A stretch of 64,000 nucleotides of DNA from sequence record MK308675.1; one strand, 5' to 3'. The notes under the pieces are model-generated. The model was given only the letters and a program-made list of their open reading frames with translations, was not told the origin of the DNA and did no database searches. Position numbers and translations under genes: made by a program. This document shows positions 10,275 through 63,994 of the stretch, one piece after another; within the stretch, counting starts at the first letter, position 1; each line of letters begins with the position of its first letter.

Positions 10275-12096
10275 CGTACCTTCAGCCAGTTCGTTAGACT
10301 GACCCGCAGCATGACCTGCTAAGCTCTAGGGTTTCCCACTAGACGACTCACCTTCGTGAGAAGGGCATTTGACTGCCGTCGAGACTATATCATCGGTTCC
10401 TCTCAAGGACACCGCCTCATGCTTCGCCCGCACTTGCTGGGCTAGCGCTAACTTATTCCGCTATTAGGATAGCATCTGTTAGCATTAGTCGTTGAACCTG
10501 CCACAGTTTAAAGTAGCTCGGCTGCTGATTACCAATTCCATGTTCCCTTAGGAGTGTCATCGCGACAGGTCCATAGGACATCTCTTATGTTCTTTCTGTT
10601 TTCACAGCCTTTCCATCTGAACTTTCGTTCTCTGTTTCGGCCATAAGAGCTTTACGGATTTCCAGCAATTCAAAAGGTTTTACTTCGACTTAGATTTCCA
10701 GCTTCTCAATCTTTTTATGTTAATGTTAAAGCGCCCAAGCAAAGGGACGTTTTTCTTTTCAGCGTTTCTTATTGTAGACTCAGCTATGCCTATTTGCTTA
10801 GCAACTTGCTGTATGGAAGTGCCTACGTAGATTTCTTTAGTTAAGGGGTCCTCTACAGTAACGATGGCCGAAATGCGACTAGCGTCCTTCAGGATAGCGC
10901 CTTCCGCTTCTGTAAAGTCTGGCCATTCAGGTTTGTCCAAAACGGGACGAACCACGTAGCCTCGGCACGGGACATCGTCGAAGGTACTCTTCATCCTGGA
11001 AACATTCGACTCCACTGTCCCTATGTATCTGGCAGCTGCTCCGGAACTTTCAAAGATTTTTACTTCTCCGAAACTTTCCGGGCGATAGCTTTTTACCATA
11101 CAGGACGCGCACATACCAGAGCGACCAACCTGTTTTTCTAGCTCCGACGCCACCGGTACCGGCAATCCGCTGTCTTCATAGGAAAAAGCATATGTGCCCT
11201 TTTCATTTAGCTGATAGACGGCTTCTTCTGCGGCTCTTCTAGAAAGGCGGTCCACGCTATTGAAGTGCATGCCTGTGGCTTTAGCGGCCACCGTAGAGGA
11301 ACTATATATTTCCTGAGTGTTTTCTCTAACGTCAAAAACACAAACTCTTCTACCCTTCCCTTTTCTTGAGATGTTCTTTTCTTTCCCGGCGTTCTTGCTC
11401 TGAGTAAGCCATTGAAGGTTACTGAGCCCATCATTAAAGCCATCAGTATCCTTATGGTCACACTCTAAAACATCCACGTTAGCCGGATAGTCTTTAAAAG
11501 CCAGTAGTTTCGCTCTGCCTCTCCCAAGTAACAGATGTCGCCCCAAGTCGTCTAAAATACTGGCCTTCATATAACGACCATGTATGCTAAATGAATGGGT
11601 CTTTCCGGTTGCTCCATTCAGCAATAGACCTTCTTTAGACAGTCCGTATTTCGTACAGCCTGGAATCCTAAAGTAATTTGGATTTTTTCTAAGCGGCAGG
11701 GGTTTGGTAAACCCATACGTTAGATTACCTGGATGTAGATTATTACGGTCACCGTCTATGAACAATGGGCGTATTTTTCTTACTTCTTCCAGAGAAAAAG
11801 CGAAGAGTTTCTTCCATGCCCAGACCATAACTTTAGCGATGGCCACTTCCACACGGCCATTATCGCTTTTTAAGAATACGCTTTTGTTTCTTCCATTGAC
11901 TTTGCGGACACATTTTGCTTCCGTTCCGTCACTAGAATAAACATTACCCTTTTTGTCTAGCCAGAGACCATAGTTTGGAATCTCGACTCGACTAACATTA
12001 ACATAACCACTTAAACGTTCTCTTTTCATAGCTTATCTCCTCTATGATATCCGTTTTTATGGTTTATTTTGATTTAAAAAACTTACCCTTCTTTTA
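10275..12096 (-). mobile_element. group I self-splicing intron (1822 nt) in nvRNAP beta' with a homing endonuclease ORF
   Basis: The 5' exon ends in U (TTCGAT), the intron starts TAA and ends in G. Core elements on the minus strand: P AATTGCTGGAAA (10659-10670), Q AATCAGCAG (10522-10530), R GTTCAACGACTA (10486-10497), S GATATAGTC (10383-10391). Confidence 0.93.
10680..12029 (-). CDS. intron-encoded HNH homing endonuclease with NUMOD4- and NUMOD1-like modules
   Basis: Intact motif CDHKDTDGFNDGLSNLQWLTQSKN; a degenerate first copy (FIDGDRNNLHPGNL); GAGGAG RBS inside the intron. Confidence 0.9.
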   Translation of the reverse strand: MKRERLSGYVNVSRVEIPNYGLWLDKKGNVYSSDGTEAKCVRKVNGRNKSVFLKSDNGRVEVAIAKVMVWAWKKLFAFSLEEVRKIRPLFIDGDRNNLHPGNLTYGFTKPLPLRKNPNYFRIPGCTKYGLSKEGLLLNGATGKTHSFSIHGRYMKASILDDLGRHLLLGRGRAKLLAFKDYPANVDVLECDHKDTDGFNDGLSNLQWLTQSKNAGKEKNISRKGKGRRVCVFDVRENTQEIYSSSTVAAKATGMHFNSVDRLSRRAAEEAVYQLNEKGTYAFSYEDSGLPVPVASELEKQVGRSGMCASCMVKSYRPESFGEVKIFESSGAAARYIGTVESNVSRMKSTFDDVPCRGYVVRPVLDKPEWPDFTEAEGAILKDASRISAIVTVEDPLTKEIYVGTSIQQVAKQIGIAESTIRNAEKKNVPLLGRFNINIKRLRSWKSKSK

Positions 12097-13434
12097 ATCG
12101 AAATCTGCGTTAGGTCCCACCAGTGCAAGGACCGAGAGTGCTATCTCGCATTCGCTTAGGCCCACGATTCTTAATCCTTGCGTGCTAGACCTTGCAAGAC
12201 TAGGATAACGAGTCAGAGCACACTTAATGCCGCCGCCCTTACGCTTACGTGTACGCAACGTAGAAGGCAGTTCTTTAAGTGTAGGGTTACCAGCCGCATC
12301 TTTTACTACGATGGTCTGAGCAACGCTCTCAGGAGTCGGAGGAGTATCATCGATAAGTTCTTCCAGGACATCTACAAGTAGAGGGTCCCAATCCGTAGCA
12401 TGTTGTAGTACGTAGGCTTGGGCCTGAGCGTGACTAAACTTATGTTTCCGGATGAGCTTAGCGATGACTAATGGTTCCAGACAAGTTAACATCTGATGGT
12501 ACGGTACGAGAATAGTATCGTACTCATGAGGACGATGATAAGACGTGATGATGTTACGGAACGAGTAGTTCATGCGCGTACCGAAGTTCACACGGCGTAA
12601 CCAACCAGACTTAGACGATAAGTTGTTTTCGATAACGTCTTTATAGTAGTTGGTTAAGTCTACCATGATGTTAGTAAAGCGAGTCTCTAATCGCTTCACG
12701 TTTATCATGCCCATTGTGCCGGCTGCGGCAAAGATAGCTTCCATTGCAGAAGCCATTGTCTTATCGTAGTAGTTACCGTAAGCTGTTGACTCGATGGCAA
12801 ATGCTACTTTAGACGGGATTGGAATGTGCTTAACGAATAGATGCTCACGGTACTCTTCCACAAACTCTTTCAGTTCTTGGCGTTTCTGCACGGAGGCAGT
12901 CTGGCGTAAAGCAACTTCTAGAATCTTGTCGAACTCTTCTTTTACATTAGAGAGGCCACGTTTAAGACCTAGCTTCTTGAAGTGCTCTACAATAGAGGTA
13001 CCTTTCTTCTTAGACTCATCTGGGTCAGGCAGCTTAGGGTCCATTGCCCACTGCAAGCCATCGAAGCCACGGTTATCCTTTAAGCGTTCGCTTAGGAAAA
13101 TCCAAGGCAGTGGTGCTAAGAAGTAATCGATGCCGCGAGGAACAGAAATCCAGATTTCCGATTCGATTGCTTGGTTGTGGTGAGATACCACTTTGGTGTT
13201 ACAGTGTTCACAGATAACACCGAGGTTAACTGCTTCTTTTGTCTTACGACAACCACACTGAGGCACAGTAGCTAAAACATCCGAAGACTCATACTTAGTC
13301 ACCGTCAATGACTCAAGTAGCTTTCGGTCTTCTTCGGTTTCAAGTTTCAGTTCGTTTACGATGACCGGAGGGTTTTCCATTGAAGATAAACGCCAGTCCA
13401 AGTTACCGAATTTTAGAACCTGTGTTCCTAACAT
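12097..13434 (-). CDS. nvRNAP beta' N-terminal subunit, exon 1 (phiKZ gp55-like)
   Basis: Zn-binding CGC...CEHC, GWLRRVNFGTRMNYSFR and TRYPSL; ends GPNADFD. The spliced product would be 508 aa. Confidence 0.92.
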
Positions 13435-54995: not shown

Positions 54996-55856
54996 ATGTC
55001 ACAGGTCCTTTTAGGCGCTGACCACAGCCTTAACCGTGGTGCAAACACTGGGGTCGCTGACCCTCGTGTTGGTGCACAGAACGGCTTGGTTCCTGACTTT
55101 GCTAACTGGGCAAACTCAGGCAAGATGGTTAAGCAGCGTTTGATTCCGGTTCTTATCCAAGAACCTTCAGGCATGCAGCTAATGGACGATGGTCCTAGCC
55201 GTATCGAATTCCTGAAAGCAATGGTAGAGCTACTGCCTAAATCTATTACGGGTCTAAACCGTTCTAAAGAAGGTGCGTTCCTAGAAACTGTTGCAACGAA
55301 CTCGGGCGAAGTAATGGAGACGGTTACTCGTGTATCTCGTCAACGTTCTACTCCGACGTACGTTTGGGATGAGCTAGATGGTAAACCAATCACTCGTTCA
55401 ATCGAGGACTGGATGGATGAGCTTATGCAAGATAGTATCACTGGTCACCCGGGTATTATCTCTAAGCCAGCCTATGAAGAAGCAGGTTCTCCTGCTATCT
55501 CTCCTGACTTCCAGTCAATGGTAGTGCTATTCATCGAGCCTAACCGCCAGATGAACGGTGTAACATCTGCTTACCTTTGTGCTAACATGATGCCTAAGTC
55601 GTTCACTGACGAGTCTTCTCGTGTTGTAGGTGAAGACCTTGAAGGTATGGAACAAACTGTAGAGTTTACTGCATTCACCATGACTGGTACTGCGGTTAAC
55701 GCTATGGCGCTTGAATACTTGAACTCTGTTCAGAAGACTGGTCTAGCTCCTCGCGGTCTAGCTCCATTCCAAGCGGGCCGTTCAGTTAACGTCGCATCTG
55801 ACGCTGCTCCTCTGGGTAACGTTGAAGCGGTTAACGCTGTAGCTGCTACTCTGTAA
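54996..55856 (+). CDS. tail tube protein (phiKZ gp30-like)
   Basis: 286 aa directly after the sheath gene; VLFIEPN...AYLCANMMPK motif. Confidence 0.85.
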   Translation: MSQVLLGADHSLNRGANTGVADPRVGAQNGLVPDFANWANSGKMVKQRLIPVLIQEPSGMQLMDDGPSRIEFLKAMVELLPKSITGLNRSKEGAFLETVATNSGEVMETVTRVSRQRSTPTYVWDELDGKPITRSIEDWMDELMQDSITGHPGIISKPAYEEAGSPAISPDFQSMVVLFIEPNRQMNGVTSAYLCANMMPKSFTDESSRVVGEDLEGMEQTVEFTAFTMTGTAVNAMALEYLNSVQKTGLAPRGLAPFQAGRSVNVASDAAPLGNVEAVNAVAATL

Positions 55857-55873
55857 GCAAAAAAAATAATGAT

Positions 55874-55904
55874 ATACTCCCCGAGCGAAATGCTCGGGGA
55901 GTAT
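55874..55904. terminator. bidirectional terminator after the tail tube gene
   Basis: ATACTCCCCGAGC/GCTCGGGGAGTAT stem. Confidence 0.75.
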
Positions 55905-55907
55905 TTG

Positions 55908-56045
55908 TTATTCTTCCTCTTCCTCGTCGTCAAGGAAGTCATCGATGTCGGAAGCCACATCCTCAGGATTTACTGGCTCTTCATCTAGGTCCAAATGGAG
56001 ACCGAACTCGTCTGCCCAGTCTCCTGAAATAGAGTCTCTAATCAT
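55908..56045 (-). CDS. 45-aa highly acidic microprotein (not in ORF track)
   Basis: MIRDSISGDWADEFGLHLDLDEEPVNPEDVASDIDDFLDDEEEEE; the start overlaps the upstream stop and the gene ends at a terminator. Confidence 0.65.
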   Translation of the reverse strand: MIRDSISGDWADEFGLHLDLDEEPVNPEDVASDIDDFLDDEEEEE

Positions 56046-56295
56046 CTTTTAACTCTTCGGTGATTTCTTTACGGAACGCGATAAGTTCCGCTTGGATTTT
56101 CTTAGCTTCGGAGATTTGAAGCGTTAGGGTGGTGTCGGTAGCACGACCTGAGTTAGGCGTAATAGTAGAAAGCTTAGGGCGCTTTTTAGTAAGCTTACTG
56201 ATAGCGTCTTTAATTTCCAGGTTAGTAGACGTAATGCGCTGTAGTTCGAGAAGAAGGGAAAGGTTAAAACCTTTTAGGCTTAGAGTGTTTGACAT
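56038..56295 (-). CDS. small helical or coiled-coil protein
   Basis: 85 aa with GAGGA RBS. Confidence 0.6.
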   Translation of the reverse strand: MSNTLSLKGFNLSLLLELQRITSTNLEIKDAISKLTKKRPKLSTITPNSGRATDTTLTLQISEAKKIQAELIAFRKEITEELKDD

Positions 56296-56320
56296 GTAGA
56301 GTCCTCTTTATAAGAATGAG

Positions 56321-56626
56321 TTAAACGCCGAAACGCTGTTCAACGTAACGGATGATGTATGGTGCCAAGATTACTTCGTACAGGCTATCGCACTTCTCGG
56401 TGCTGCCGTCGTTGGGTAGGACGCCATCGCGAATTAGCACGTAGTGGCGCTTGATGTCTCGGGGGTCCGTATCGTGTTTTTCCATGACCGCATCGATGAA
56501 CGTCTTAAGTTCATGTACGGTAGGCTGACGCTTTATGAACGCTCGACTTTCGGCAGGCTCTTTATTAGGTGCCTGACCGAACAGGTCCTGAAATACGTGC
56601 GCTTGTGAGCGGAAGTGCTGATGCAT
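56321..56626 (-). CDS. hypothetical protein
   Basis: 101 aa with GGAG RBS. Confidence 0.55.
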   Translation of the reverse strand: MHQHFRSQAHVFQDLFGQAPNKEPAESRAFIKRQPTVHELKTFIDAVMEKHDTDPRDIKRHYVLIRDGVLPNDGSTEKCDSLYEVILAPYIIRYVEQRFGV

Positions 56627-56712
56627 GTTTTGTTCTCCAAAAAATAAAATGTGATAGGTGGTTAAAAAGCCAGCACGGATGCTGGCTTTTTATTTCGGTA
56701 TTGCTTTATGCG

Positions 56713-57138
56713 TTACTCTTCTTCAGCTACTGCTTCTTCAGATGTAACTAGTGCAGCTACTTGAGCGTGCACTTGCTTGATTACGCTTTCCGGACCGAAC
56801 GTGTGAGTGATTGCAGAAGTCATGTAGTTATGACGCTCTTCATCTTTAATCGTTGCAGTCTTGTGGTAAGAGTGCTCAATCGCCATGTTTAGTTTAGGTG
56901 CAGTAAATGTACCTTGAACTTCTTCATAGCCAGACTCAATAGCCATTTCGCCAAGAGCAAGTGCAGAACCCGCTGTGAAGTCTTCAACATGCTGCATAGA
57001 CGCGCGGAAGTTTTCTTCAGTCAAACCTTCTGGTAGAGTTTCGATGATTGCTTCGTTATCAGTAACTAGGCCATCTTCAACTTTAGTCGTAGCTTTAAGA
57101 AGGTCACAGATGTTTTGCATTGCAGTTGTATTAGACAT
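56713..57138 (-). CDS. probably abundant early acidic protein; promoter and RBS nearly identical to chmA
   Basis: 141 aa; biased codons; monocistronic between a promoter and a terminator. Confidence 0.7.
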   Translation of the reverse strand: MSNTTAMQNICDLLKATTKVEDGLVTDNEAIIETLPEGLTEENFRASMQHVEDFTAGSALALGEMAIESGYEEVQGTFTAPKLNMAIEHSYHKTATIKDEERHNYMTSAITHTFGPESVIKQVHAQVAALVTSEEAVAEEE

Positions 57139-57186
57139 GATAGTCTCCTGGTTGTTGTATGGGAATTACCCGTTTAAATGCATAAA

Positions 57187-57206
57187 GACAATATAGGTGA
57201 TAGATT
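57187..57206 (-). promoter_or_regulatory. putative early promoter, twin of the chmA promoter
   Basis: AATCTATCACCTATATTGTC, 19/20 identical to the chmA copy. Confidence 0.65.
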
Positions 57207-57645
57207 ACTTTGAACGATACAAGTATGTAAACTCTCGTGGCGTGAATGTCAATACTCTACGTGATAAGAACGCATTGTAAATATCGACACCAACATCGTG
57301 CTGTTCAAAGTTAACTACTTGACGCACGGCCTCAGGGCGGTTGCGTTGTAGTGGTCGCTCAAAGGAGAAGCCGATGATGTCACCGCGAGGGATTGAAACC
57401 GTATGGCCTTCGATTGGCTGGAACGTGATAAGGTCGCCGTCTTCTTCAAAGTCATAAGACAGGAAGATGTCCATAGCTTGACGAGGAGAGGATTTTAACT
57501 CCTTCCCGAATTCGCCATAGGTATTGCAACTTTCTTCACGCACCCATTCTAAGTTCGCAGTATCGAACATCATCGATACGGCCTGATATTGCTTCATGGT
57601 GTTATCCATGCAGCGCAATAGCTCTGCTGTATTACCTAACCACAT
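57205..57645 (-). CDS. hypothetical protein
   Basis: 146 aa with AAGGAG RBS. Confidence 0.55.
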   Translation of the reverse strand: MWLGNTAELLRCMDNTMKQYQAVSMMFDTANLEWVREESCNTYGEFGKELKSSPRQAMDIFLSYDFEEDGDLITFQPIEGHTVSIPRGDIIGFSFERPLQRNRPEAVRQVVNFEQHDVGVDIYNAFLSRRVLTFTPREFTYLYRSK

Positions 57646-57656
57646 AGGGTTACTCC

Positions 57657-57956
57657 TTATAAGTCAAGAATCCAACCAGTATCGTTCTGAAGAGCGACTT
57701 GCTCATCTGCCTTCTTGATTTCGTTTTCGCGATTTCGACATTCTTCCAAGAACTCGATAACTAGTTGTGGTTTACGCTCATGTTTAGCTTGAGCAAGTGC
57801 ATCCTCAATGCGTTCTACATTGAGAGAGATATCGTTACGGCGGAGAATGTTCTCCATAGTAAGAGCTAGGGATTTCTCTGTACGGAAGCGTTTTAGAAAT
57901 TCACGGATTTCAGAACGTACAGTAAGAGAACCTGAGATAGTTACGATTGCTTTCAT
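57657..57956 (-). CDS. hypothetical protein
   Basis: 99 aa with AGGA RBS. Confidence 0.6.
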   Translation of the reverse strand: MKAIVTISGSLTVRSEIREFLKRFRTEKSLALTMENILRRNDISLNVERIEDALAQAKHERKPQLVIEFLEECRNRENEIKKADEQVALQNDTGWILDL

Positions 57957-58065
57957 TTTCTTTTCCTAATGGATTTTAAGAGGTAGTTAATAAAGTTTAA
58001 GTAGATTGTATCAAGATACATCGATAAAAGGCTCTGTGTGCGTTACAGAGCCTTTAGGCAAGTAT

Positions 58066-58860
58066 CTAAGCTAACTTGTTCACGTCGATATTCCATTTGC
58101 GGAAACGCTCAGGGTTATCGGTGTTCCAAGGAATCTCTCCACCTAGTATGCCCCAGATGACTCCGTTGGGTAGTCCGAAGAACGGATGGTCTCTCGGTAA
58201 GTCACAGCGTTTAGCGTCCGGATGGTTGATTGGGCTAGCTTGTTCGTCTTCGTTCGCAACACCGAACAGGAAGTAGCTATCTACCGACCCTTCGAAGTGA
58301 CCGTCTGGATTCTTACCTATTGCTGAAGCTCGAGGTATGTATGCGGACGGTTGAATGTTTACGATGATGGTTGCGTCATCTAAGTGAGTAACCAATAAGC
58401 CGCGTCCGACTTCTAGGTTCTGTCCTTTAGGGATAACGCTGTCCAAATCCCAACGAGTGAACTCTTGGTATGTAGGGTGGCACATCGCTTCTTCTACACG
58501 GTTACGTGCAGCCATCTTGCGAGCTTGACGCTCAGAACGAGGACGCAGTTGGATAACTGGCGACTCGGATGCTCTCTGAGGTTTAACCTCTCGAACATAA
58601 GGTTTCGTATTAAGGTTAGGGTTAGCGTCGACTTTAGGTTGGTCGTAGCGAGGACGGCTAGGTACTTCTACAACTTTCTCTTGGACAACAACTTTCTCTA
58701 CCTCTACGATTTTAGGTTCTACTGGGTCAACCGCTATTTGTAGCGTCTCGACACGAGCCCACGCAGACGGCTCAAAGAAACCTAAGGAAAGGATTACTAA
58801 CAGTGCAGTTGCAAAGTTAGCAATAGCCTTGCCCAAGCGCGTAAAGATATTACTTAACAT
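58066..58860 (-). CDS. secreted or membrane-anchored protein
   Basis: MLSNIFTRLGKAIANFATALLVILSLG...AWA signal-like N-terminus; Pro/Val/Glu linker. Confidence 0.65.
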   Translation of the reverse strand: MLSNIFTRLGKAIANFATALLVILSLGFFEPSAWARVETLQIAVDPVEPKIVEVEKVVVQEKVVEVPSRPRYDQPKVDANPNLNTKPYVREVKPQRASESPVIQLRPRSERQARKMAARNRVEEAMCHPTYQEFTRWDLDSVIPKGQNLEVGRGLLVTHLDDATIIVNIQPSAYIPRASAIGKNPDGHFEGSVDSYFLFGVANEDEQASPINHPDAKRCDLPRDHPFFGLPNGVIWGILGGEIPWNTDNPERFRKWNIDVNKLA

Positions 58861-58880
58861 AAAAGTATTCCTTATAAGTG

Positions 58881-58933
58881 GGCTAACGCCAGAGGAGTGC
58901 CCTCGTTAGAAGACACTCGAGTTGCGTTAGCTA
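58881..58933 (-). repeat. 53-bp structured repeat, copy 1
   Basis: 52/53 identical to 60235-60287. Confidence 0.9.
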
Positions 58934-59512
58934 GGTATGAAGAACGGCGTCTATGTACATTCTGTGTTCTTGGAAATAGGTAAAACCTTGCGTTTCCAGA
59001 CACAGTAGGCCGTCACGTAGGCCGTCAGCGATGAACTTTACAAGCTCGCTATCGCTGTCGCTTACTGAGAAAGTTTCACGTGCAAGAATGTCTTCGGTAG
59101 ACTTTAGTAAGTCCTCCGCGGACAGCCGTACTCGGTCAATGGCATCGTTCAGGCGGACCATGTCCTTACGCGACAGTCTTTTAGAAACCCATTCGGTAAA
59201 AGCCAAACGGCCACCTAGATAGCAAAGGCCAAGACCGATGCCGACCACCGCCAGCCATGCGTTCGCGCCGAACGCAGCGCCTTTAAGGAAGGCAGTTAGC
59301 TTGGCAAAACCCGATGCCTTGGCAGCGGATGCGGCGAGACCGCCACTAACGGCACTAGCGCCGGCAAAGCCAGCCAGAAAGGTATCTACAAAGACAATGT
59401 TGTTCTTAAAGCGACATCTCTCAGAGAAGAACTCCATTACGCTGGATTTGGTTTCGGCGGTCTTGATGGCGTACGCTATTTTGTTAAGCGTCAGTATGTC
59501 TTTCTTGTTCAT
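58931..59512 (-). CDS. membrane protein with Gly/Ala-zipper region
   Basis: FLAGFAGASAVSGGLAASAAKASG...AVVGIGLGLCYLGG. Confidence 0.6.
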   Translation of the reverse strand: MNKKDILTLNKIAYAIKTAETKSSVMEFFSERCRFKNNIVFVDTFLAGFAGASAVSGGLAASAAKASGFAKLTAFLKGAAFGANAWLAVVGIGLGLCYLGGRLAFTEWVSKRLSRKDMVRLNDAIDRVRLSAEDLLKSTEDILARETFSVSDSDSELVKFIADGLRDGLLCLETQGFTYFQEHRMYIDAVLHT

Positions 59513-59762
59513 TTTTTCTTTCCTTTATAAAGTCAATAATGGTAGATTCTTCGGGCTTGTTCTTATACACCCAAAGTAAGAGCATGTCTAGTTCTTTCCA
59601 AGGTTGGCCGTGTGGCTCCAGCCGACTCACCCCATGTGTTTTATGCCCGCTGATGGTAAGTAAGGTCTCTGCGAGTTTTTGGAAGTTTCTTTTATTTTCG
59701 ACCACCACTCCGGCAAGCTTCCCGCCGCCATAGAGCGCTACGAGTATCAGAATCGCTGGCAT
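59484..59762 (-). CDS. small N-anchored protein
   Basis: MPAILILVALYGGGKLAG; overlaps both neighbours. Confidence 0.55.
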   Translation of the reverse strand: MPAILILVALYGGGKLAGVVVENKRNFQKLAETLLTISGHKTHGVSRLEPHGQPWKELDMLLLWVYKNKPEESTIIDFIKERKNEQERHTDA

Positions 59763-60214
59763 GGTTTACCTCCGGCACGGACCATATACTCGTGAGCCAA
59801 AGGACTACCTTGGTTCTCTTTAAAAGTAAACGGAACAAAATCGGGCTGAGTAAGCTCTATTTCGCCCGAGTGCTCCTCGATGGTTACCGTGAGCCCATTC
59901 ATGGCGGCACGGACAACGCCCATCTCCCACGCGTACCATGCGAAGATAGAAGCATGCTCTAAATTTCTCTTAGTTCCTTCTTTGCCCCAAAGTTCAAAAT
60001 AGCGCTTTAGGTCGTAAGGCTTAGAAAAATCAAACATGAAGTCGATGTCTCGGCGGGTATATCCTTCCTCCAAGGCCTCTAACATGAAAGGACTAATGTC
60101 AAACGAGATAATCGCTTGACGTTCGTATGGTGGAATTCCAAACAGGAAAGAAACGACATAAGCGTAAAGCGTAAAGAACACTTTAACTGCGAAAGATTTA
60201 ATATTAGAAAACAT
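59747..60214 (-). CDS. early membrane protein, MF-x-x-IK cluster
   Basis: MFSNIKSFAVKVFFTLYAYVVSFLFG. Confidence 0.6.
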   Translation of the reverse strand: MFSNIKSFAVKVFFTLYAYVVSFLFGIPPYERQAIISFDISPFMLEALEEGYTRRDIDFMFDFSKPYDLKRYFELWGKEGTKRNLEHASIFAWYAWEMGVVRAAMNGLTVTIEEHSGEIELTQPDFVPFTFKENQGSPLAHEYMVRAGGKPCQRF

Positions 60215-60234
60215 AATAGTATTCCTTATTCTGA

Positions 60235-60287
60235 GGCTAACGCCAGAGGAGTGCCCTCGCTAGAAGACACTCGAGTTGCGTTAGCTA
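60235..60287 (-). repeat. 53-bp structured repeat, copy 2
   Basis: 52/53 identical to 58881-58933. Confidence 0.9.
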
Positions 60288-60332
60288 ACAATAGAGAACT
60301 CATCCTAGGCGTCCCCAGGATGAGTTAATGTG

Positions 60333-60632
60333 TTAGGCTTGTGCTTCGTCGCTAGCTTCTACTTGAGCGTTAACGTCGTCAGCTAGGTCGTGTTTCTCAG
60401 CTACAACAGGAGCTTCTACTGTAGACATGTCGTTAGTAGACTCAGTAGCAGGAACAGACTCTTCAATCTGCTCCATGACTTCTTCAGCTTCAGCCGAACC
60501 GATTTCAGTGAATGTTGCACAAACGAAAGTAACAAGAGCGAATGCCGCAGCAGCCCAAGTCTTAGGTGAAGTTAGGAAAGCCCAAGTTGCTTTAGCAGCA
60601 TTAACGATAGCGTTTTTGATAGTAGTAAACAT
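60333..60632 (-). CDS. early single-TM protein with acidic tail, MF-x-x-IK cluster
   Basis: MFTTIKNAIVNAAK...WAAAAFALVTFVCATF. Confidence 0.65.
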   Translation of the reverse strand: MFTTIKNAIVNAAKATWAFLTSPKTWAAAAFALVTFVCATFTEIGSAEAEEVMEQIEESVPATESTNDMSTVEAPVVAEKHDLADDVNAQVEASDEAQA

Positions 60633-60689
60633 AACGATGTTTCCTTATTTAAATGATTTCGAATTAGGTTTTAAGAATAGCGACTTAGA

Positions 60690-60887
60690 TTAAGCTGCCG
60701 CTGAAGCTTCGTCAGACTTACCGAATGGGTTAAGGCCAGACAGTTTCGCACCTAGTGCAGAGAACTTCTCTTTAGCAGAAGCTTTAACAGTTTGGAACTT
60801 AGCTTTAGCTTTAGTAGCTAGAGAAGATACAGCTGTTTTGATTGAAGCGAAACGAGTAGAGATTGAAGTTTTTACATTAGCGAACAT
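60690..60887 (-). CDS. 65-aa K/A/S-rich amphipathic protein with 11-mer repeats
   Basis: FANVKTSISTR / FASIKTAVSSL ... FQTVKASAKEK / FSALGAKLSGL. Confidence 0.7.
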   Translation of the reverse strand: MFANVKTSISTRFASIKTAVSSLATKAKAKFQTVKASAKEKFSALGAKLSGLNPFGKSDEASAAA

Positions 60888-60956
60888 AATAGTTCTCCTG
60901 ATTTGATTTAGTTAAATGAAAGATGCAGGAAGAGAGTCCTGCGGCTCGTAATTGAG

Positions 60957-61256
60957 TTAAGCTTTTGGAGTGCCGTCTTCGTTGTACTTGTCGAAGATAG
61001 CTTCTACGAAAGCAATGATGAACCCGTATGCCGCAAGTGTAGAGAATAGCACTACGAAGAATGCAATAGTCGGTAGACCGCCTAGTTCAATAGCAGTTGC
61101 TAGAGCAAGAGCAGCAACCCAGCCAAGCATGGTCAGCAATACGCCAGCGATGAATTTACCGAAGCGTGTTAGATGTGCCCAGAAACCTTCACCTTCAACG
61201 TCGTTGAAAAGGTGGCCAGAGATATTTGCGAAAGTAAGTTGAATAGTTGCGAACAT
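60957..61256 (-). CDS. early two-TM membrane protein
   Basis: MFATIQLTFANIS start followed by two long hydrophobic helices. Confidence 0.65.
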   Translation of the reverse strand: MFATIQLTFANISGHLFNDVEGEGFWAHLTRFGKFIAGVLLTMLGWVAALALATAIELGGLPTIAFFVVLFSTLAAYGFIIAFVEAIFDKYNEDGTPKA

Positions 61257-61335
61257 GATAGTTCTCCTTATGAGATAGAAAGTTATTTTGTGTTAAAAGC
61301 GGATTGACTATGTAGTACTAAGAATTTCTTGAAAG

Positions 61336-61704
61336 TTAAGCAAACGTTTTAGTTGCTACAACTCCAACCTTCTTAGCCTTACGAGCTTCCTCAGCTTTGT
61401 TACCGCCAGCATAGATGCACATGCTGTAGTGCTTAGGATTTTGTGGGTTAGCCGCTGCTTTACACTCGATAACGAATAGAGAGTAAAACACGATAGCTGA
61501 CATTTCAGGTACGCCGACTACTAGACCCAGGATGATAAGACCAACTGCAAGTAGTTCGCAGAGGCCAGCAAAGATAACAAGAATTTGACGACCAGTCTCA
61601 GATTCAGTGAACCATTCGATGATGTCAAGTACAAGAGTAAAGATACCCATTACTTTAGAGCGCACAGAAATGAACGCATTTGAAATTAGTGCTAACATAG
61701 TCAA
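61336..61704 (-). CDS. early two-TM membrane protein
   Basis: Likely start MLALISNAFISVRSK. Confidence 0.6.
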   Translation of the reverse strand: MTMLALISNAFISVRSKVMGIFTLVLDIIEWFTESETGRQILVIFAGLCELLAVGLIILGLVVGVPEMSAIVFYSLFVIECKAAANPQNPKHYSMCIYAGGNKAEEARKAKKVGVVATKTFA

Positions 61705-61738
61705 TGTCCTTAATGATAGAAAGTTAATTACACGAGGG

Positions 61739-61751
61739 CAATATAGGTTTT
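61739..61751 (-). promoter_or_regulatory. putative early promoter for the membrane-protein cluster
   Basis: AAAACCTATATTG. Confidence 0.6.
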
Positions 61752-61756
61752 AATAA

Positions 61757-62026
61757 TTATGCAGCTTTTGCACAATCGTCAAAGAAGTAAATCGGTTTAG
61801 CCATAATGCGTGCTTTAGCGTGAGCTGAAGTGTAAACATCTTTAAGGCGAGCTGGTGCAAAGAAAACTTCTTCCCATAGACGTGGATTGAAGTAAAGCAC
61901 AAGTAAAGCGATTGGTGAAACGACAGAAAGGATTGCCGATAGGAAAGCAAGCACTTCTAGTACAAAGCTGCCAACGTAGTAAAGTGGACGGTTAGCAAGT
62001 ACAATGTTTTTAGTTTTAGCGAACAT
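61757..62026 (-). CDS. early membrane protein
   Basis: MFAKTKNIVLANR start followed by a TM segment. Confidence 0.6.
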   Translation of the reverse strand: MFAKTKNIVLANRPLYYVGSFVLEVLAFLSAILSVVSPIALLVLYFNPRLWEEVFFAPARLKDVYTSAHAKARIMAKPIYFFDDCAKAA

Positions 62027-62132
62027 AGCAGTTCTCCTTTATGCCAAAAGAAAATTATACATACCCCTATCTGCTCGAGCAGATAGGAGGGGGTATGTTT
62101 AAAGGATTAATATAAGAGTGAGAGCATAAAGA

Positions 62133-62145
62133 TAATATGGGTTTT
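62133..62145 (-). promoter_or_regulatory. putative early promoter
   Basis: AAAACCCATATTA. Confidence 0.55.
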
Positions 62146-62208
62146 ACTTTTTCTTGAAAACGTGAAATAGGTAAGGATACGAGCCGAAGCCCGTATCCCT
62201 TTTATGCG

Positions 62209-62559
62209 CTAGGCCACAAAGTAGGCAAATACAACAGCCACTATCCCGAGGAATAACTGAAGACCTACAAATGTTGTCTTAACTTCTTCTTTCACCAGAG
62301 CATGTTTCAGGAAACTACCCCGAGGTCGCTTGAAGGTAACTGAGTTACCATTGGCACCGTAGTAGTGTTCGATGTTACATGCGTCGCACATAACCTTACG
62401 GATAAATGCAACAGGCTTAGGCGCCTTAACGTTAGTGAAGTCAGAAAAAGCTTTTTGTAGTCCCCAGATAAGAAGAGCCGCAAAAGCTAGGATAAGAATA
62501 GAGTACATGGTAATTGCCTCCGTAGTGTGATTACCAGAATGTTGAACTACGTGGGTCAA
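62209..62559 (-). CDS. membrane protein with N- and C-terminal TM segments
   Basis: Likely start MYSILIL (GGAGG RBS). Confidence 0.55.
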   Translation of the reverse strand: MTHVVQHSGNHTTEAITMYSILILAFAALLIWGLQKAFSDFTNVKAPKPVAFIRKVMCDACNIEHYYGANGNSVTFKRPRGSFLKHALVKEEVKTTFVGLQLFLGIVAVVFAYFVA

Positions 62560-63337
62560 TCAATTGAACTTTCTCCCAGCCCATGGCAGAGCGAATCATA
62601 GTTGAAGTAACTAAGTCATCTCCTTCCATGCCGATGCCGTCGAGTAGTTTGGCTTCCTGCTCAGATTTAAATAGAGCAGCCTCACTGATAGCGATAGGTT
62701 CATCTTTGTCAGGTGTCCAGATGCCTTCGTTAGAAGCATCGATACCTTCCATAGATGGCGTATCCCATTTGTTTGCTACAGCAATACCGCCATGGTTCAC
62801 TTGGTCCCACGTAACGATTAGTTTGATACGTTTATTTGGAACGCCGCCTTCATAAGTAGTAGGGTGCGTTAGAGTACGTATCGAGAAGTCGACATTCTCT
62901 TCTGGATTGTCAAACTTCTTCTCTAGTTGAGGACCATATAAGCCAGAGCCCTTAACCCAACCGAACACTTTAATAATGCGATTGCCTTTATCGTCTTTAC
63001 CTTCTTCTAGTCGTACTGACTTGATGTGGTGACCAACGAGTTCATTTGCAACGCGACCTACACGACTAACGAACATGCCGAAAGTCATACCAGGAACAGG
63101 ATAAGGGTGTTCAACCTCACCGTGTAGTTTACCGTTAGCGATTTGTTGCATTAGTCGAGAGCTAGGAGAGAACATAGCTTCAAGTTCTTTAGTGAAGCGG
63201 TAGAACTCGCCTTTCTCAGACATGCAGTTAAATGCACCTAAACAGATTTCACGATAACCATTGGCATCAATGGCCATCTTGCCAACTTTGTTGCGTGTCT
63301 GCAACACAGTGCTTTCATATAGAGCGATAGTAGACAT
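62531..63337 (-). CDS. prohead protease (phiKZ gp175-like)
   Basis: GEVEHP, HHIKSV, FSIRTL and VTWDQVNHGGI motifs. Confidence 0.85.
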   Translation of the reverse strand: MSTIALYESTVLQTRNKVGKMAIDANGYREICLGAFNCMSEKGEFYRFTKELEAMFSPSSRLMQQIANGKLHGEVEHPYPVPGMTFGMFVSRVGRVANELVGHHIKSVRLEEGKDDKGNRIIKVFGWVKGSGLYGPQLEKKFDNPEENVDFSIRTLTHPTTYEGGVPNKRIKLIVTWDQVNHGGIAVANKWDTPSMEGIDASNEGIWTPDKDEPIAISEAALFKSEQEAKLLDGIGMEGDDLVTSTMIRSAMGWEKVQLIDPRSSTFW

Positions 63338-63340
63338 TGT

Positions 63341-63994
63341 TTACAACCTCAACAGCGATTCTATTTCTTCTGTGGTCTCACTTGGGTTCACTAGGGAAGA
63401 TGCGATACCTGTTTTAAGGTACGAGCCCAATAAGCGAGACGCTGTATTATCAGCACCGAACGCGACACTTCGCAGTGGGATAATGTCAACTTCGGCGTTG
63501 TCGTAATCTTCTTGTGTAGCGAAACCTTCGCGTGCCGGAATAGAGCGGTCTGCCGGGTCACGAATACAAGAAGAGGCAAAGATAGATTGTAGGGACTGAC
63601 CACCACCCAAGTCTACACCTGCAAACTTAGGAGCAGAATAAAACAGTTCAGCGCGAGCACGGTGACCGATATACCAAGGCTGTTTGCCTTTAGCAACGAT
63701 TTCATCGTATACTTCGAACACTAATGTCTTCTTCTGTGCCAAACGATAGTTAGGACAGATAACGCTACCTTTAGTCCAGCTAAGAACATAGTAGCTACCT
63801 TCCTTGACTTTCACGACGCCTACTTCTTCAGGAGTAAAAGGCATGATAGCGTGCACGCGACTTAATGCGTAAGAGCCACCAACAATCCAACCTACGAAAC
63901 AGGCGGCATTGTAACGGCCGTCAATAGTGCCTAACTTACCGTTGAAGTAGTGCTCTGGAATGTGAAGTGAGATATCTTCTTTAGCAATCAGCAT
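63341..63994 (-). CDS. virion RNAP small subunit (phiKZ gp176-like)
   Basis: IPEHYFNGKLG...YYVLSW...RDP...LRSVAFGADNTASRLLGSY; sits upstream of the protease as in phiKZ-like phages. Confidence 0.7.
   Translation of the reverse strand: MLIAKEDISLHIPEHYFNGKLGTIDGRYNAACFVGWIVGGSYALSRVHAIMPFTPEEVGVVKVKEGSYYVLSWTKGSVICPNYRLAQKKTLVFEVYDEIVAKGKQPWYIGHRARAELFYSAPKFAGVDLGGGQSLQSIFASSCIRDPADRSIPAREGFATQEDYDNAEVDIIPLRSVAFGADNTASRLLGSYLKTGIASSLVNPSETTEEIESLLRL

What the first reader, a model, noticed from the sequence alone, without database searches (positions are those of the whole stretch)
58066..62026. Early cluster of small membrane proteins sharing an amphipathic M-F/L-(A/S/T) N-terminus
Seen: seven genes begin MFAKTK, MLALIS, MFATIQ, MFANVK, MFTTIK, MFSNIK and MLSNIF, each with an AGGA RBS and ATGTT start, under early promoters at 61739 and 62133. 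Their N-termini lack acidic residues and are K/R/S/T/A-rich; most continue into TM helices. Established: Chimalliviridae first shelter their genome in a membrane-derived early infection vesicle. Inference: a shared membrane-targeting leader defining a module for vesicle formation or remodelling, or for superinfection exclusion; part of the similarity could reflect translation-initiation bias.
Basis: partly seen in the sequence, partly recalled or inferred. Interest (0 to 1): 0.7.

Follow-up and report, generated by a model that had tools for sequence, protein, structure and literature searches.

The report
Shared start tag on phage membrane genes
A giant Vibrio phage carries an early-expressed row of tiny, otherwise unrelated membrane-protein genes that nearly all begin with the same nine-residue start (M-F-A-T-I-K-N-x-hydrophobic); the shared start is real and kept in a related phage, but the cluster is a lineage-specific accessory module, not the family-wide machinery for the early infection vesicle.

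Summary
The window is Vibrio phage vB_VmeM-Yong, a chimallin-encoding jumbo phage. Seven of nine consecutive minus-strand genes (58066-62026) start ATGTT behind an AGGA Shine-Dalgarno and encode M-[FL]-[AST]-x-[IVT]. Clustering is non-random genome-wide (permutation p = 4e-4 for ATGTT, none of 200,000 shuffles for the peptide motif). The two cited promoters match a strand-specific intergenic motif that also precedes the chimallin gene. Six of the seven have TM helices. All are ORFans with no similarity beyond about residue 9.

A metagenomic relative (protease 60% identical) has the same operon, with four of five genes starting MFATIK, MFAAIK, MFATIK and MFSTLI. About 45 other chimallivirus loci have one loose, non-membrane match among roughly 700 genes. 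Other early genes and other membrane proteins of this phage lack the start.

A 99-nt module (hairpin, RBS, five codons) brackets a three-gene insertion as a direct repeat. It is 93-100% identical in a third phage whose gene bodies have diverged.

Best reading: a fast-evolving accessory early operon of envelope proteins. It grows and exchanges genes through a shared 5' module, and the encoded N-terminal peptide is under selection. A role in forming the early infection vesicle is not supported. Function remains untested.

The parts
62124..62159 (-). Early-promoter-like motif P1 (core CCCATATTA at 62141-62133)
   Evidence: PWM score 47.2 bits, second best in the genome. The motif family is strand-specific and intergenic.
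62057..62096 (-). 5'-leader hairpin followed by a U-rich tract. The promoter-plus-hairpin cassette is duplicated elsewhere in the genome.
   Evidence: Inverted repeat I9. Fold z-score -4.1. A near-identical cassette lies at record position ~286,330-286,220. An analogous promoter, hairpin and U-tract occur in L011.
61757..62026 (-). Gene MFAKTK, 89 aa, one long TM segment
   Evidence: No Pfam, PHROG or NCBIfam hit. GC3 0.31.
61730..61765 (-). Early-promoter-like motif P2 (core CCTATATTG at 61747-61739)
   Evidence: PWM score 31.2 bits.
61336..61698 (-). Gene MLALIS, 120 aa, 2-3 TM segments
   Evidence: The ATG at 61698 has correct SD spacing and matches GenBank.
60957..61256 (-). Gene MFATIQ, 99 aa, 2 TM segments. 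A degenerate promoter-like site lies upstream at ~61316.
   Evidence: PWM score 11.5 bits at 61316.
60690..60887 (-). Gene MFANVK, 65 aa, Lys/Ala/Ser-rich, no TM. The start motif recurs internally (FANVKT at 2-7, FASIKT at 13-18).
   Evidence: Weak LEA_1 hit, E = 0.013, below the cut-off. GC3 0.27.
60333..60632 (-). Gene MFTTIK, 99 aa, one TM plus an acidic C-terminal tail. Its ortholog in the relative starts MFATIKNA.
   Evidence: BLASTP against L011 9577-9915: 29% identity, E = 4e-7. Seven of the first 8 residues are identical.
60297..60326 (-). Terminator-like hairpin after MFTTIK
60201..60299 (-). 99-nt 5' module, copy A: two-stem hairpin (60236-60285), RBS and the first 5 codons of MFSNIK
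   Evidence: Direct repeat D2, 85% identical to copy B. The 60246-60157 segment, which runs from the hairpin's 3' arm through the RBS into about codon 19, is 93-100% identical in L106.
59747..60214 (-). Gene MFSNIK, 155 aa, N-terminal TM plus a C-terminal domain. First gene of the inserted three-gene segment.
   Evidence: Homolog in L106, 62% identical. AF2 model unusable, pLDDT 36.
59484..59762 (-). Unannotated gene MPAILI, 92 aa, N-terminal TM, no shared start
   Evidence: Good RBS. The ORF and its overlapping junctions are conserved in L106 485-745.
58931..59512 (-). Gene MNKKDI, 193 aa, Gly/Ala-rich TM region, no shared start. The GenBank product 'D-3-phosphoglycerate dehydrogenase' is unsupported.
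   Evidence: No family or PDB match. Homolog P0007, 53% identical.
58847..58945 (-). 99-nt 5' module, copy B: two-stem hairpin (58882-58931), RBS and the first 5 codons of MLSNIF
   Evidence: The same hairpin architecture, with compensatory changes, precedes the ortholog in L011 (9932-9985).
58066..58860 (-). Gene MLSNIF, 264 aa. Signal-peptide-like N-terminus (cleavage-like AWA|R at ~35), Pro/Val/Glu/Lys-rich linker, conserved C-terminal DLPRDHP motif.
   Evidence: Only homolog is P0002, aligned (29% identity by MAFFT; 25% by BLASTP, E 1e-13). AF2 model unusable, pLDDT 37.
58027..58055 (-). Perfect 11-bp hairpin just after the last stop codon; probable end of the transcription unit
   Evidence: Read from the sequence. 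It was not flagged by the T-run rule.
62209..62508 (-). Upstream neighbour MYSILI, 99 aa, 2 TM. It lies before P1 and so belongs with the protease unit. It fits only a relaxed motif (M-Y-S-x-L).
   Evidence: Positional ortholog L011 8219-8518 shares GANGN(S)VTF.

Best explanation
This is a lineage-specific, accessory early operon of about nine small ORFan envelope proteins. It sits in the variable region between the head-maturation protease gene and the tail tube and sheath genes of a nucleus-forming jumbo phage.

Shown:
- Two early-type promoter motifs, P1 and P2, precede the operon, and a hairpin follows its last gene.
- Seven genes share a start module: a strong SD, a short spacer, then AUG-UUY-(G/A/U)CN-A(C/A)U-AUY-AAA-AAY. 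This encodes M-F-A-T-I-K-N-x-hydrophobic.
- The module persists in a diverged relative, although the protein bodies are unrelated or only 25-29% identical.
- A 99-nt version of the module (hairpin, RBS, five codons) brackets a three-gene insertion as a direct repeat.

Inferred:
- The array grows, loses and swaps genes by duplication and recombination at this shared 5' module, much as T4-type phages shuffle ORFans at PeSL cassettes.
- The encoded nonapeptide is kept by selection as an acid-free, neutral-to-basic N-terminal tail that begins a short interfacial helix ahead of the TM segments. It is a hallmark of the family rather than a generic membrane-insertion signal.
- The proteins are made immediately after injection and act on the host envelope. 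The likeliest roles are superinfection exclusion or other conditioning of the envelope. They do not build the early infection vesicle.
For: - Identity and context: 100% match to Vibrio phage vB_VmeM-Yong. Chimallin-like, RNAP-beta-like, sheath and protease genes are present. Synteny runs protease, then a variable region, then tail tube and sheath in BONAISHI, pir03, sm033 and L011.
- Non-random clustering of the start.
- Strand-specific promoter motif at 62141 and 61747, which also precedes the chimallin gene. L011 has a variant promoter plus a leader hairpin ahead of its own cluster.
- Conservation in the relative: MFATIK, MFAAIK, MFATIK and MFSTLI in 4 of 5 consecutive genes. The orthologous pairs are only 25-29% identical overall.
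- Specificity: about 45 other chimallivirus loci hold a single loose match (a 48-aa ORF with no TM helix, MLTFTI) among roughly 700 genes. The IMG/VR scan finds gene-start matches with a recognisable RBS only in the L011-type phage.
- Peptide-level selection: synonymous variation at Phe, Ala and Ile codons. The A/T-ending codon choice fits the low GC3 of these genes. The initiation regions are no less structured than other genes.
- Recombination at the module: 99-nt direct repeats flank genes 59747, 59484 and 58931, which are absent from L011. L106 carries the same three genes bounded by the same hairpin, with the 5' module 93-100% identical against 40-70% for the gene bodies.
- Membrane character: TM predictions.
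Against: - No expression, localisation or phenotype data exist. Early timing rests on a motif only.
- Paralogy cannot be shown, because there is no detectable similarity beyond about residue 9.
- Similarity within Yong also covers the non-coding spacer (0.61 against 0.35 in the background). That is expected under an RNA-level constraint or recent common descent, not under peptide selection alone.
- Only three phage lineages carry the feature, so the evolutionary sample is small.
- Amphipathicity is weak in 4 of the 11 N-termini.
- Predicted topology differs between the orthologs Y60333 and M9577 by the positive-inside rule (my reading of the sequences).
- The envelope or superinfection-exclusion function rests on analogy only.
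Confidence: 0.5

Rival explanations
1. RNA-level element. The conserved roughly 30-nt initiation region (SD, spacer, AUG, about 6 codons) is an operator or enhancer for coordinated translational control of this early gene set. Possible modes are a phage RNA-binding repressor in the manner of T4 RegA, or preferential initiation. The shared peptide would then be a by-product.
For: - Similarity within Yong extends into the non-coding spacer (-12..-1: 0.61 against 0.35 in the background; none of 5,000 random gene sets reached it).
- Spacers in L011 (AACACTATT, AACATTACC) resemble those in Yong.
- Codons 2-6 are 78% A+T, against 65% for other genes.
- Lys is AAA in 9 of 9 cases and Thr is ACT in 7 of 8.
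- The substitutions A/S/T and T/N keep the nucleotide pattern NCU and AMU.
Against: - Phe, Ala and Ile codons vary synonymously.
- The A/T-ending choice is explained by the genes' overall low GC3.
- The upstream TAAGGAGAACTA context is shared with unrelated genes such as the DNA polymerase.
- Initiation-region folding energy does not differ from other genes (p = 0.08 and 0.56).
- No RegA-like gene was identified, but no genome-wide search was done.
Confidence: 0.25
2. The shared N-terminus is a membrane-targeting amphipathic leader that defines a module which forms or remodels the early phage infection vesicle.
For: - Early-type promoters and a high density of TM proteins.
- Some N-termini are strongly amphipathic: MLSNIFTRLGKAIANF and MFSTLINKITQHAR lie at the 99th percentile.
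- Some early phiKZ proteins associate with the vesicle.
Against: - The cluster is absent from all other chimalliviruses examined.
- The vesicle forms without new protein synthesis.
- Other membrane proteins of this phage lack the leader.
- The distance from the motif to the first TM helix is variable, and one member has no TM helix.
- Four of the 11 N-termini are not amphipathic.
Confidence: 0.08
3. A specific sorting or recognition tag. The nonapeptide is bound by one dedicated host or phage factor (an insertase, chaperone, protease or scaffold). That factor would deliver or regulate a diversifying set of small proteins at one site.
For: - The peptide is conserved while the protein bodies diverge.
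- It is present on a member with no TM helix, and repeated within that member.
- Its position at the extreme N-terminus is invariant.
Against: No candidate partner has been identified. The sample is small. The data fit simple family descent equally well.
Confidence: 0.12
4. Chance, base composition or a gene-calling artefact.
For: Codons 2-6 are A/T-rich genome-wide, and 10% of all genes start ATGTT.
Against: - Permutation tests.
- Independent recurrence in a second phage.
- A single loose, non-membrane match among about 700 control genes.
- The starts agree with GenBank.
Confidence: 0.02

Closest known systems
PeSL (promoter-early stem-loop) regulatory cassettes in hyperplastic regions of T4-type phages (Arbiol et al. 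2010, PMC2839356; PMC4122927)
   Same: - Short conserved regulatory modules with a stem-loop are repeated among small non-essential ORFan genes in a variable region between core gene blocks.
- Repeats flank insertions and deletions that distinguish related phages.
- The module is far better conserved than the genes it flanks.
   Different: - The promoter here is a jumbo-phage motif (ACCYATATTR), not sigma-70-like.
- The 99-nt repeat carries no promoter.
- The module extends through the RBS into the coding sequence, so recombinant genes inherit a common N-terminal peptide. That is not described for PeSLs.
- Recombination was inferred here, not observed.
Capsid targeting sequence (CTS) of T4 internal proteins IPI, IPII and IPIII (my own knowledge)
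   Same: A roughly 10-residue N-terminal peptide is shared by otherwise unrelated small phage proteins. The cluster here also lies next to the head-maturation protease gene.
   Different: - The CTS ends at a Glu that the prohead protease cleaves. The tag here has no acidic residue before position 14.
- The proteins here are hydrophobic and sit behind early-type promoters. T4 internal proteins are soluble, basic and late.
T4 early envelope proteins Imm and Sp, and other superinfection-exclusion proteins such as P22 SieA (PMC10883804)
   Same: Small early membrane or periplasmic proteins that are non-conserved and encoded in variable regions. Gene 58066 has a signal-peptide-like N-terminus, as a periplasmic factor would.
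   Different: No sequence or family match. No functional data. Known exclusion proteins do not share a common start tag.
T4 RegA translational operators (my own knowledge)
   Same: A set of early mRNAs shares an A/U-rich sequence overlapping the start codon.
   Different: RegA operators are loosely conserved and do not impose a common peptide. No RegA homolog was looked for genome-wide.

Membership tests
Sec-type (signal peptidase I) signal peptide as the shared leader | A basic n-region is followed directly by a 7-15-residue hydrophobic h-region and a small-x-small cleavage site | tested here: not met
   Only 58066 (AWA|R) and its ortholog fit, by a rule-based reading. In the others the first TM helix starts 9-35 residues after the motif, and 60690 has none. 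No dedicated signal-peptide predictor was available.
Generic membrane-targeting requirement in this phage | Present on the phage's membrane proteins in general | tested here: not met
   At least 15 other small predicted membrane proteins lack it, including 62209, 59484 and 58931 in the same cluster.
Chimalliviridae core or early-infection-vesicle machinery | Conserved across nucleus-forming phages | tested here: not met
   The cluster is absent at the syntenic site in BONAISHI, pir03 and sm033. About 45 metagenomic and IMG/VR chimallivirus loci hold only one loose match, a 48-aa ORF without a TM helix.
Chimalliviridae core or early-infection-vesicle machinery | Needed before or at vesicle formation | not testable with these tools
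   Literature only: phiKZ vesicles form under gentamicin arrest (bioRxiv 10.1101/2024.03.24.586471).
T4-type PeSL cassettes | A repeated module with a stable stem-loop in a variable region, flanking indels between related phages | tested here: met
   99-nt direct repeats bracket a three-gene segment that is absent from L011. The hairpin fold z-scores are -4.9 and -7.5. The module is 93-100% identical in L106.
T4-type PeSL cassettes | The module contains a sigma-70-like early promoter | tested here: not met
   The 99-nt repeat has no promoter-motif hit. The separate P1-plus-hairpin cassette does contain a promoter, but of the phage-specific ACCYATATTR type. Sigma-70-like matches are no more frequent than in shuffled sequence.
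T4 capsid targeting sequence | An N-terminal tag that ends at a Glu cleaved by the prohead protease, on soluble late proteins | tested here: not met
   No D or E occurs before residue 14 in any of the 11 members. TM helices are present. Early-type promoters lie upstream.
Early gene class of this phage | Preceded by the conserved A/T-rich promoter motif that marks vRNAP early promoters in jumbo phages (PMC7598289) | tested here: met
   The sites at 62141 (47 bits) and 61747 (31 bits) belong to a strand-specific family of 26 sites that also precedes the chimallin gene. Timing itself was not measured.
RegA-type translational operator | Nucleotide-level conservation beyond what the peptide requires | tested here: inconclusive
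   The spacer is more similar than the background. However, the same context occurs in other genes, and synonymous sites vary.
Known protein families (Pfam, PHROGs, NCBIfam, PDB) | A significant profile match | tested here: not met
   No hit reaches a curated cut-off for any of the ten proteins. Only the phage's own clusters, P0002 and P0007 were found in billions of sequences.

The most novel reading that the evidence does not exclude
The nonapeptide M-F-A-T-I-K-N-x-hydrophobic is a true sorting or recognition tag, new to phage biology. It would let a nucleus-forming phage deliver an evolving repertoire of small proteins to one defined membrane site early in infection, such as the injection pole or the vesicle membrane. 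New cargo genes would acquire the tag by recombining behind a mobile module of hairpin, RBS and tag.
Probability: 0.12. Interest if true: 0.8.

Novelty: new variant of a known kind. Interest (0 to 1): 0.5.

Why it matters
Jumbo-phage genomes are full of small ORFan early genes that nobody can classify. Here a short, easily recognised start tag together with a conserved 5' module groups such genes into one evolving array. It also shows, with direct-repeat evidence, how new genes may be plugged in.

If the tag is read at the protein level, it offers a handle for finding what early membrane proteins of nucleus-forming phages do and where they go. If it is read at the RNA level, it defines a co-regulated early translation set.

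Either way, a single experiment separates the two: recode codons 2-7 synonymously and compare with amino-acid substitutions. The work also yields a candidate early-promoter consensus for this phage group.

Tried and rejected
- Family searches (Pfam, PHROGs, NCBIfam) for all ten cluster proteins gave nothing above cut-off. PADLOC was not run.
- PDB sequence searches for 58931 and 59747 gave nothing.
- Word-indexed homolog searches for 58066 and L011 9577 returned only the queries themselves.
- AlphaFold2 on 58066 and 59747, each with a two-sequence alignment, gave pLDDT 37 and 36. No fold search was attempted.
- All-against-all BLASTP within the cluster gave no support for paralogy beyond the N-terminus.
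- Rfam on 55800-63400 gave no hit.
- The exact hairpin sequence has no other copy in IMG/VR or in GTDB genomes.
- A single-protein search of IMG/VR with the protease found nothing. An alignment query was needed.
- The hypothesis that the start merely gives an unstructured initiation region was rejected. Folding energies do not differ from other genes.
- The hypothesis that it is a general early-gene bias was rejected.
- A type IV pilin-like N-terminus (FTLIE) was considered and dropped. There is no Gly-ended leader, Lys replaces Glu5, and no hydrophobic stretch follows directly.
- The MAFFT alignment of the three hairpin copies was not structure-aware, so formal pair counting was not pursued.

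Full report
**Identity and context.**
Bases 58000-62200 are 100% identical to four Vibrio mediterranei phages named vB_VmeM-Yong, each about 290 kb. The window differs from MK308674.1 at a single base. It encodes a chimallin-like shell protein (phrog_4795, E = 1e-31, full length), an RNA-polymerase beta-like subunit, DNA polymerase, terminase, tail sheath and a head-maturation protease.

The finding lies immediately downstream, on the minus strand, of the protease gene (62531-63337). In BONAISHI, pir03, sm033 and a metagenomic relative the gene order is RNAP subunits, two virion genes, protease, a variable stretch of small genes, then tail tube and sheath on the other strand. The finding therefore sits in a variable, hyperplastic-type region between conserved blocks.

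**The observation.**
All seven genes and their N-termini are as stated, and they agree with GenBank starts. Each has AGGA 7-9 nt before ATGTT.

With my own gene calls for the whole genome (316 genes), 33 start ATGTT and 7 of these lie within nine consecutive genes (permutation p = 4.3e-4). For M[FL][AST]x[IVT], 13 genes match and 7 are in the cluster (0 of 200,000 shuffles; this motif was defined after the fact). Across the seven Yong genes and four relatives the consensus is M(11/11)-F(9)-A(7)-T(5)-I(8)-K(7)-N(6)-x-hydrophobic(11).

No member has an acidic residue before position 14, whereas the median first acidic position elsewhere in the genome is 8. Hydropathy predicts TM helices in six of the seven. 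It also predicts them in three neighbours that lack the motif: 62209, the unannotated 59484-59762, and 58931. This is the densest run of membrane proteins in the genome. The term 'amphipathic' holds only in part. Five of the 11 N-termini exceed the 90th percentile of helical hydrophobic moment, and four are below the median.

**Promoters.**
These belong to an extended consensus, tTcaa..aaaa.TaaaACCTATATTacCtttatG. It has 26 PWM hits of at least 20 bits on the minus strand and none on the plus strand. Almost all hits are intergenic, 42-215 nt upstream of gene starts, and one precedes the chimallin-like gene.

This matches the published description of jumbo-phage early promoters as roughly 10-nt, A/T-rich, highly conserved motifs that can be found bioinformatically upstream of early operons (PMC7598289). 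Early timing is therefore a reasonable inference, but it has not been measured. P1 is followed by a leader hairpin and a U-rich tract. This promoter-plus-hairpin cassette recurs almost verbatim near record position 286,300.

**Is it a general early-gene or translation bias?**
It is not. Among 19 other first genes behind the same promoter motif, only the chimallin gene (MFDPKG) and one doubtful ORF start MF. None has the full motif.

Codons 2-6 are A/T-rich genome-wide (65%) and more so here (78%). However, predicted structure around the start is no weaker than in other genes (p = 0.08 and 0.56). The SD-spacer context TAAGGAGAACTA is also used by unrelated genes, including the DNA polymerase.

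**Relatives.**
The proteins have no Pfam, PHROG, NCBIfam or PDB match. They also show no similarity to one another beyond about residue 9.

A full HMMER scan of 1.8 billion representative proteins found one true homolog of 58066, namely P0002. It lies on a 215-kb metagenomic phage contig, L011, which was also recovered as L013, L039, L040, L095 and L102. The protease on that contig is 60% identical to Yong's.

That phage has the same layout:
- the protease gene;
- a 99-aa membrane protein;
- a variant early promoter (ACCTATATAA) with a leader hairpin and a U-tract;
- five small genes starting MYAFIL, MFATIK, MFAAIK, MFATIK and, after a structured hairpin, MFSTLI.

Only two pairs are recognisably orthologous. 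Y60333 and M9577 are 29% identical, yet 7 of their first 8 residues match. Y58066 and M10001 are 25% identical. The start therefore survives where the rest of the protein has diverged or been replaced.

As a negative control, I examined about 45 other chimallivirus protease loci, holding roughly 700 called genes. They contain a single loose match to the widened pattern M[FL][AST]x[IVLT]: a 48-aa ORF starting MLTFTI, with no TM helix. An IMG/VR-wide scan for ATGTTYGCNRCTATTAAA gave gene-start matches with a recognisable RBS only in the L011-type phage.

**Peptide or nucleotide?**
Synonymous positions vary (TTC/TTT; GCT/GCA/GCC; ATT/ATC). The preference for AAA, ACT and ATT fits the unusually low GC3 (0.27-0.37) of several of these genes. 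This favours selection on the peptide.

Against that, similarity within Yong also covers the non-coding spacer (0.61 against 0.35 for strong-RBS genes). In addition, the allowed substitutions (A/S/T; T/N) preserve the nucleotide patterns NCU and AMU. I therefore keep an RNA-level operator or enhancer as a serious rival.

**The 5' module as a recombination substrate.**
A 99-nt direct repeat, 85% identical, lies in front of MFSNIK (60201-60299) and MLSNIF (58847-58945). It comprises a two-stem hairpin, the RBS and the first five codons. The repeats bracket exactly the three genes 59747, 59484 and 58931. These have higher GC3 than their neighbours, and they are missing from L011, where the hairpin directly precedes the 58066 ortholog.

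A third phage fragment, L106, carries the same three genes and ends in the same hairpin on both sides. Its 5' segment, from the hairpin's 3' arm through the RBS to about codon 19, is 93-100% identical to Yong's. The rest of the segment is 40-70% identical.

At least for MFSNIK and MLSNIF, then, the shared N-terminus comes from duplication or recombination of DNA, not from convergence. This resembles PeSL-mediated shuffling in T4-type hyperplastic regions (PMC2839356). The difference is that the module here reaches into the coding sequence and donates the start peptide.

The hairpin itself keeps its architecture in L011: an outer stem, a 5+5 internal loop and an inner stem. The inner-stem sequence there is different, and the outer stem shows a compensating A-U to G-C change. 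That points to function at the RNA level, and an RNase III-type processing site is my guess. Rfam has no match.

**What it is not.**
It is not vesicle-building machinery. The cluster is confined to one small clade, and the phiKZ early infection vesicle assembles when translation is blocked.

It is not a generic membrane-insertion signal. Other membrane proteins of the phage lack it. The distance to the first TM helix is variable. The 65-aa MFANVK protein has no TM helix, and it repeats the motif internally (FANVKT and FASIKT, 11 residues apart).

It is not a T4-like capsid-targeting sequence either. The tag contains no Glu cleavage site, the proteins are hydrophobic, and the promoters are of the early type.

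**Best explanation and limits.**
I read this as an accessory early operon of rapidly evolving envelope proteins that share and exchange a 5' start module. The encoded nonapeptide is retained as a family hallmark, most simply an acid-free N-terminal tail or interfacial helix.

A host-envelope role such as superinfection exclusion is the most natural guess. The genes are early, small, membrane-bound and non-conserved, and the last one has a signal-peptide-like N-terminus and a Pro/Val/Glu/Lys-rich linker. This role is untested.

Structure prediction failed for the two largest proteins. The sample comprises three phage lineages. No expression or localisation data exist.

**Verdict.**
Interest is moderate, at 0.5. 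The feature is genuine, conserved and previously undescribed, its evolutionary mechanism is testable, and its function is unknown.

Noticed in passing
Genome-wide; in the window at 62141, 61747, 57197, 43716, 42507, 40319, 25374, 16351, 7395 and 337 (minus strand): Candidate early-promoter consensus tTcaa..aaaa.TaaaACCYATATTRcCtttatG. There are 26 PWM hits of at least 20 bits, all on the minus strand and none on the plus strand. One precedes the chimallin-like gene, and one is conserved at the orthologous site in L011 (11160).
   Followed up: partly
window 60236-60285 and 58882-58931 (minus strand); L011 9932-9985: Two-stem hairpin: an 8-bp outer stem, a 5+5 internal loop, a 10-bp inner stem and a tetraloop. 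It lies in the 5' UTR of genes 59747 and 58066. The architecture is kept in the relative, with a different inner-stem sequence and a compensatory outer-stem change. It resembles RNase III processing sites. Rfam has no match.
   Followed up: partly
window 62050-62165 (minus strand); MK308674.1 ~286,220-286,330; L011 8565-8680: A cassette of early promoter, leader hairpin and U-rich tract is duplicated within the genome and has an analogue in the relative. It could be an attenuator, a stabiliser or a recombination cassette.
   Followed up: partly
window 59484-59762 (minus strand): Unannotated 92-aa ORF with an N-terminal TM helix. It fills a 234-nt annotation gap and overlaps both neighbours. 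The ORF and the overlaps are conserved in L106 (485-745).
   Followed up: yes
window 58931-59512 (minus strand): The GenBank product name 'D-3-phosphoglycerate dehydrogenase' has no support from Pfam, NCBIfam or PDB. The protein is a Gly/Ala-rich membrane ORFan, and the name is probably a spurious low-complexity match.
   Followed up: yes
window 60690-60887 (minus strand): The 65-aa Lys/Ala/Ser-rich protein repeats the start motif internally (FANVKT at 2-7, FASIKT at 13-18). It shows roughly 11-residue repeats and a weak, sub-threshold LEA_1 hit.
   Followed up: partly
window 62209-62508 (minus strand); L011 8219-8518; BONAISHI ORF31: A small membrane protein directly follows the head-maturation protease in this subgroup. 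The Yong and L011 copies have two TM helices and share the motif GANGN(S)VTF; BONAISHI ORF31 has one predicted TM helix. It lies upstream of the early promoter, so it probably belongs to the protease transcription unit.
   Followed up: partly
window 10680-12029 next to 12094-13434 (minus strand): An HNH-endonuclease-like ORF lies beside an RNA-polymerase beta-like gene. It may be a homing endonuclease associated with a split RNAP gene.
   Followed up: no
window 60333-62026: Genes 61757, 61336, 60690 and 60333 have GC3 of 0.27-0.37, against a genome mean of 0.46 (sd 0.05). The inserted genes 59747-58931 have GC3 of 0.47-0.56. This suggests different expression levels or different origins.
   Followed up: partly
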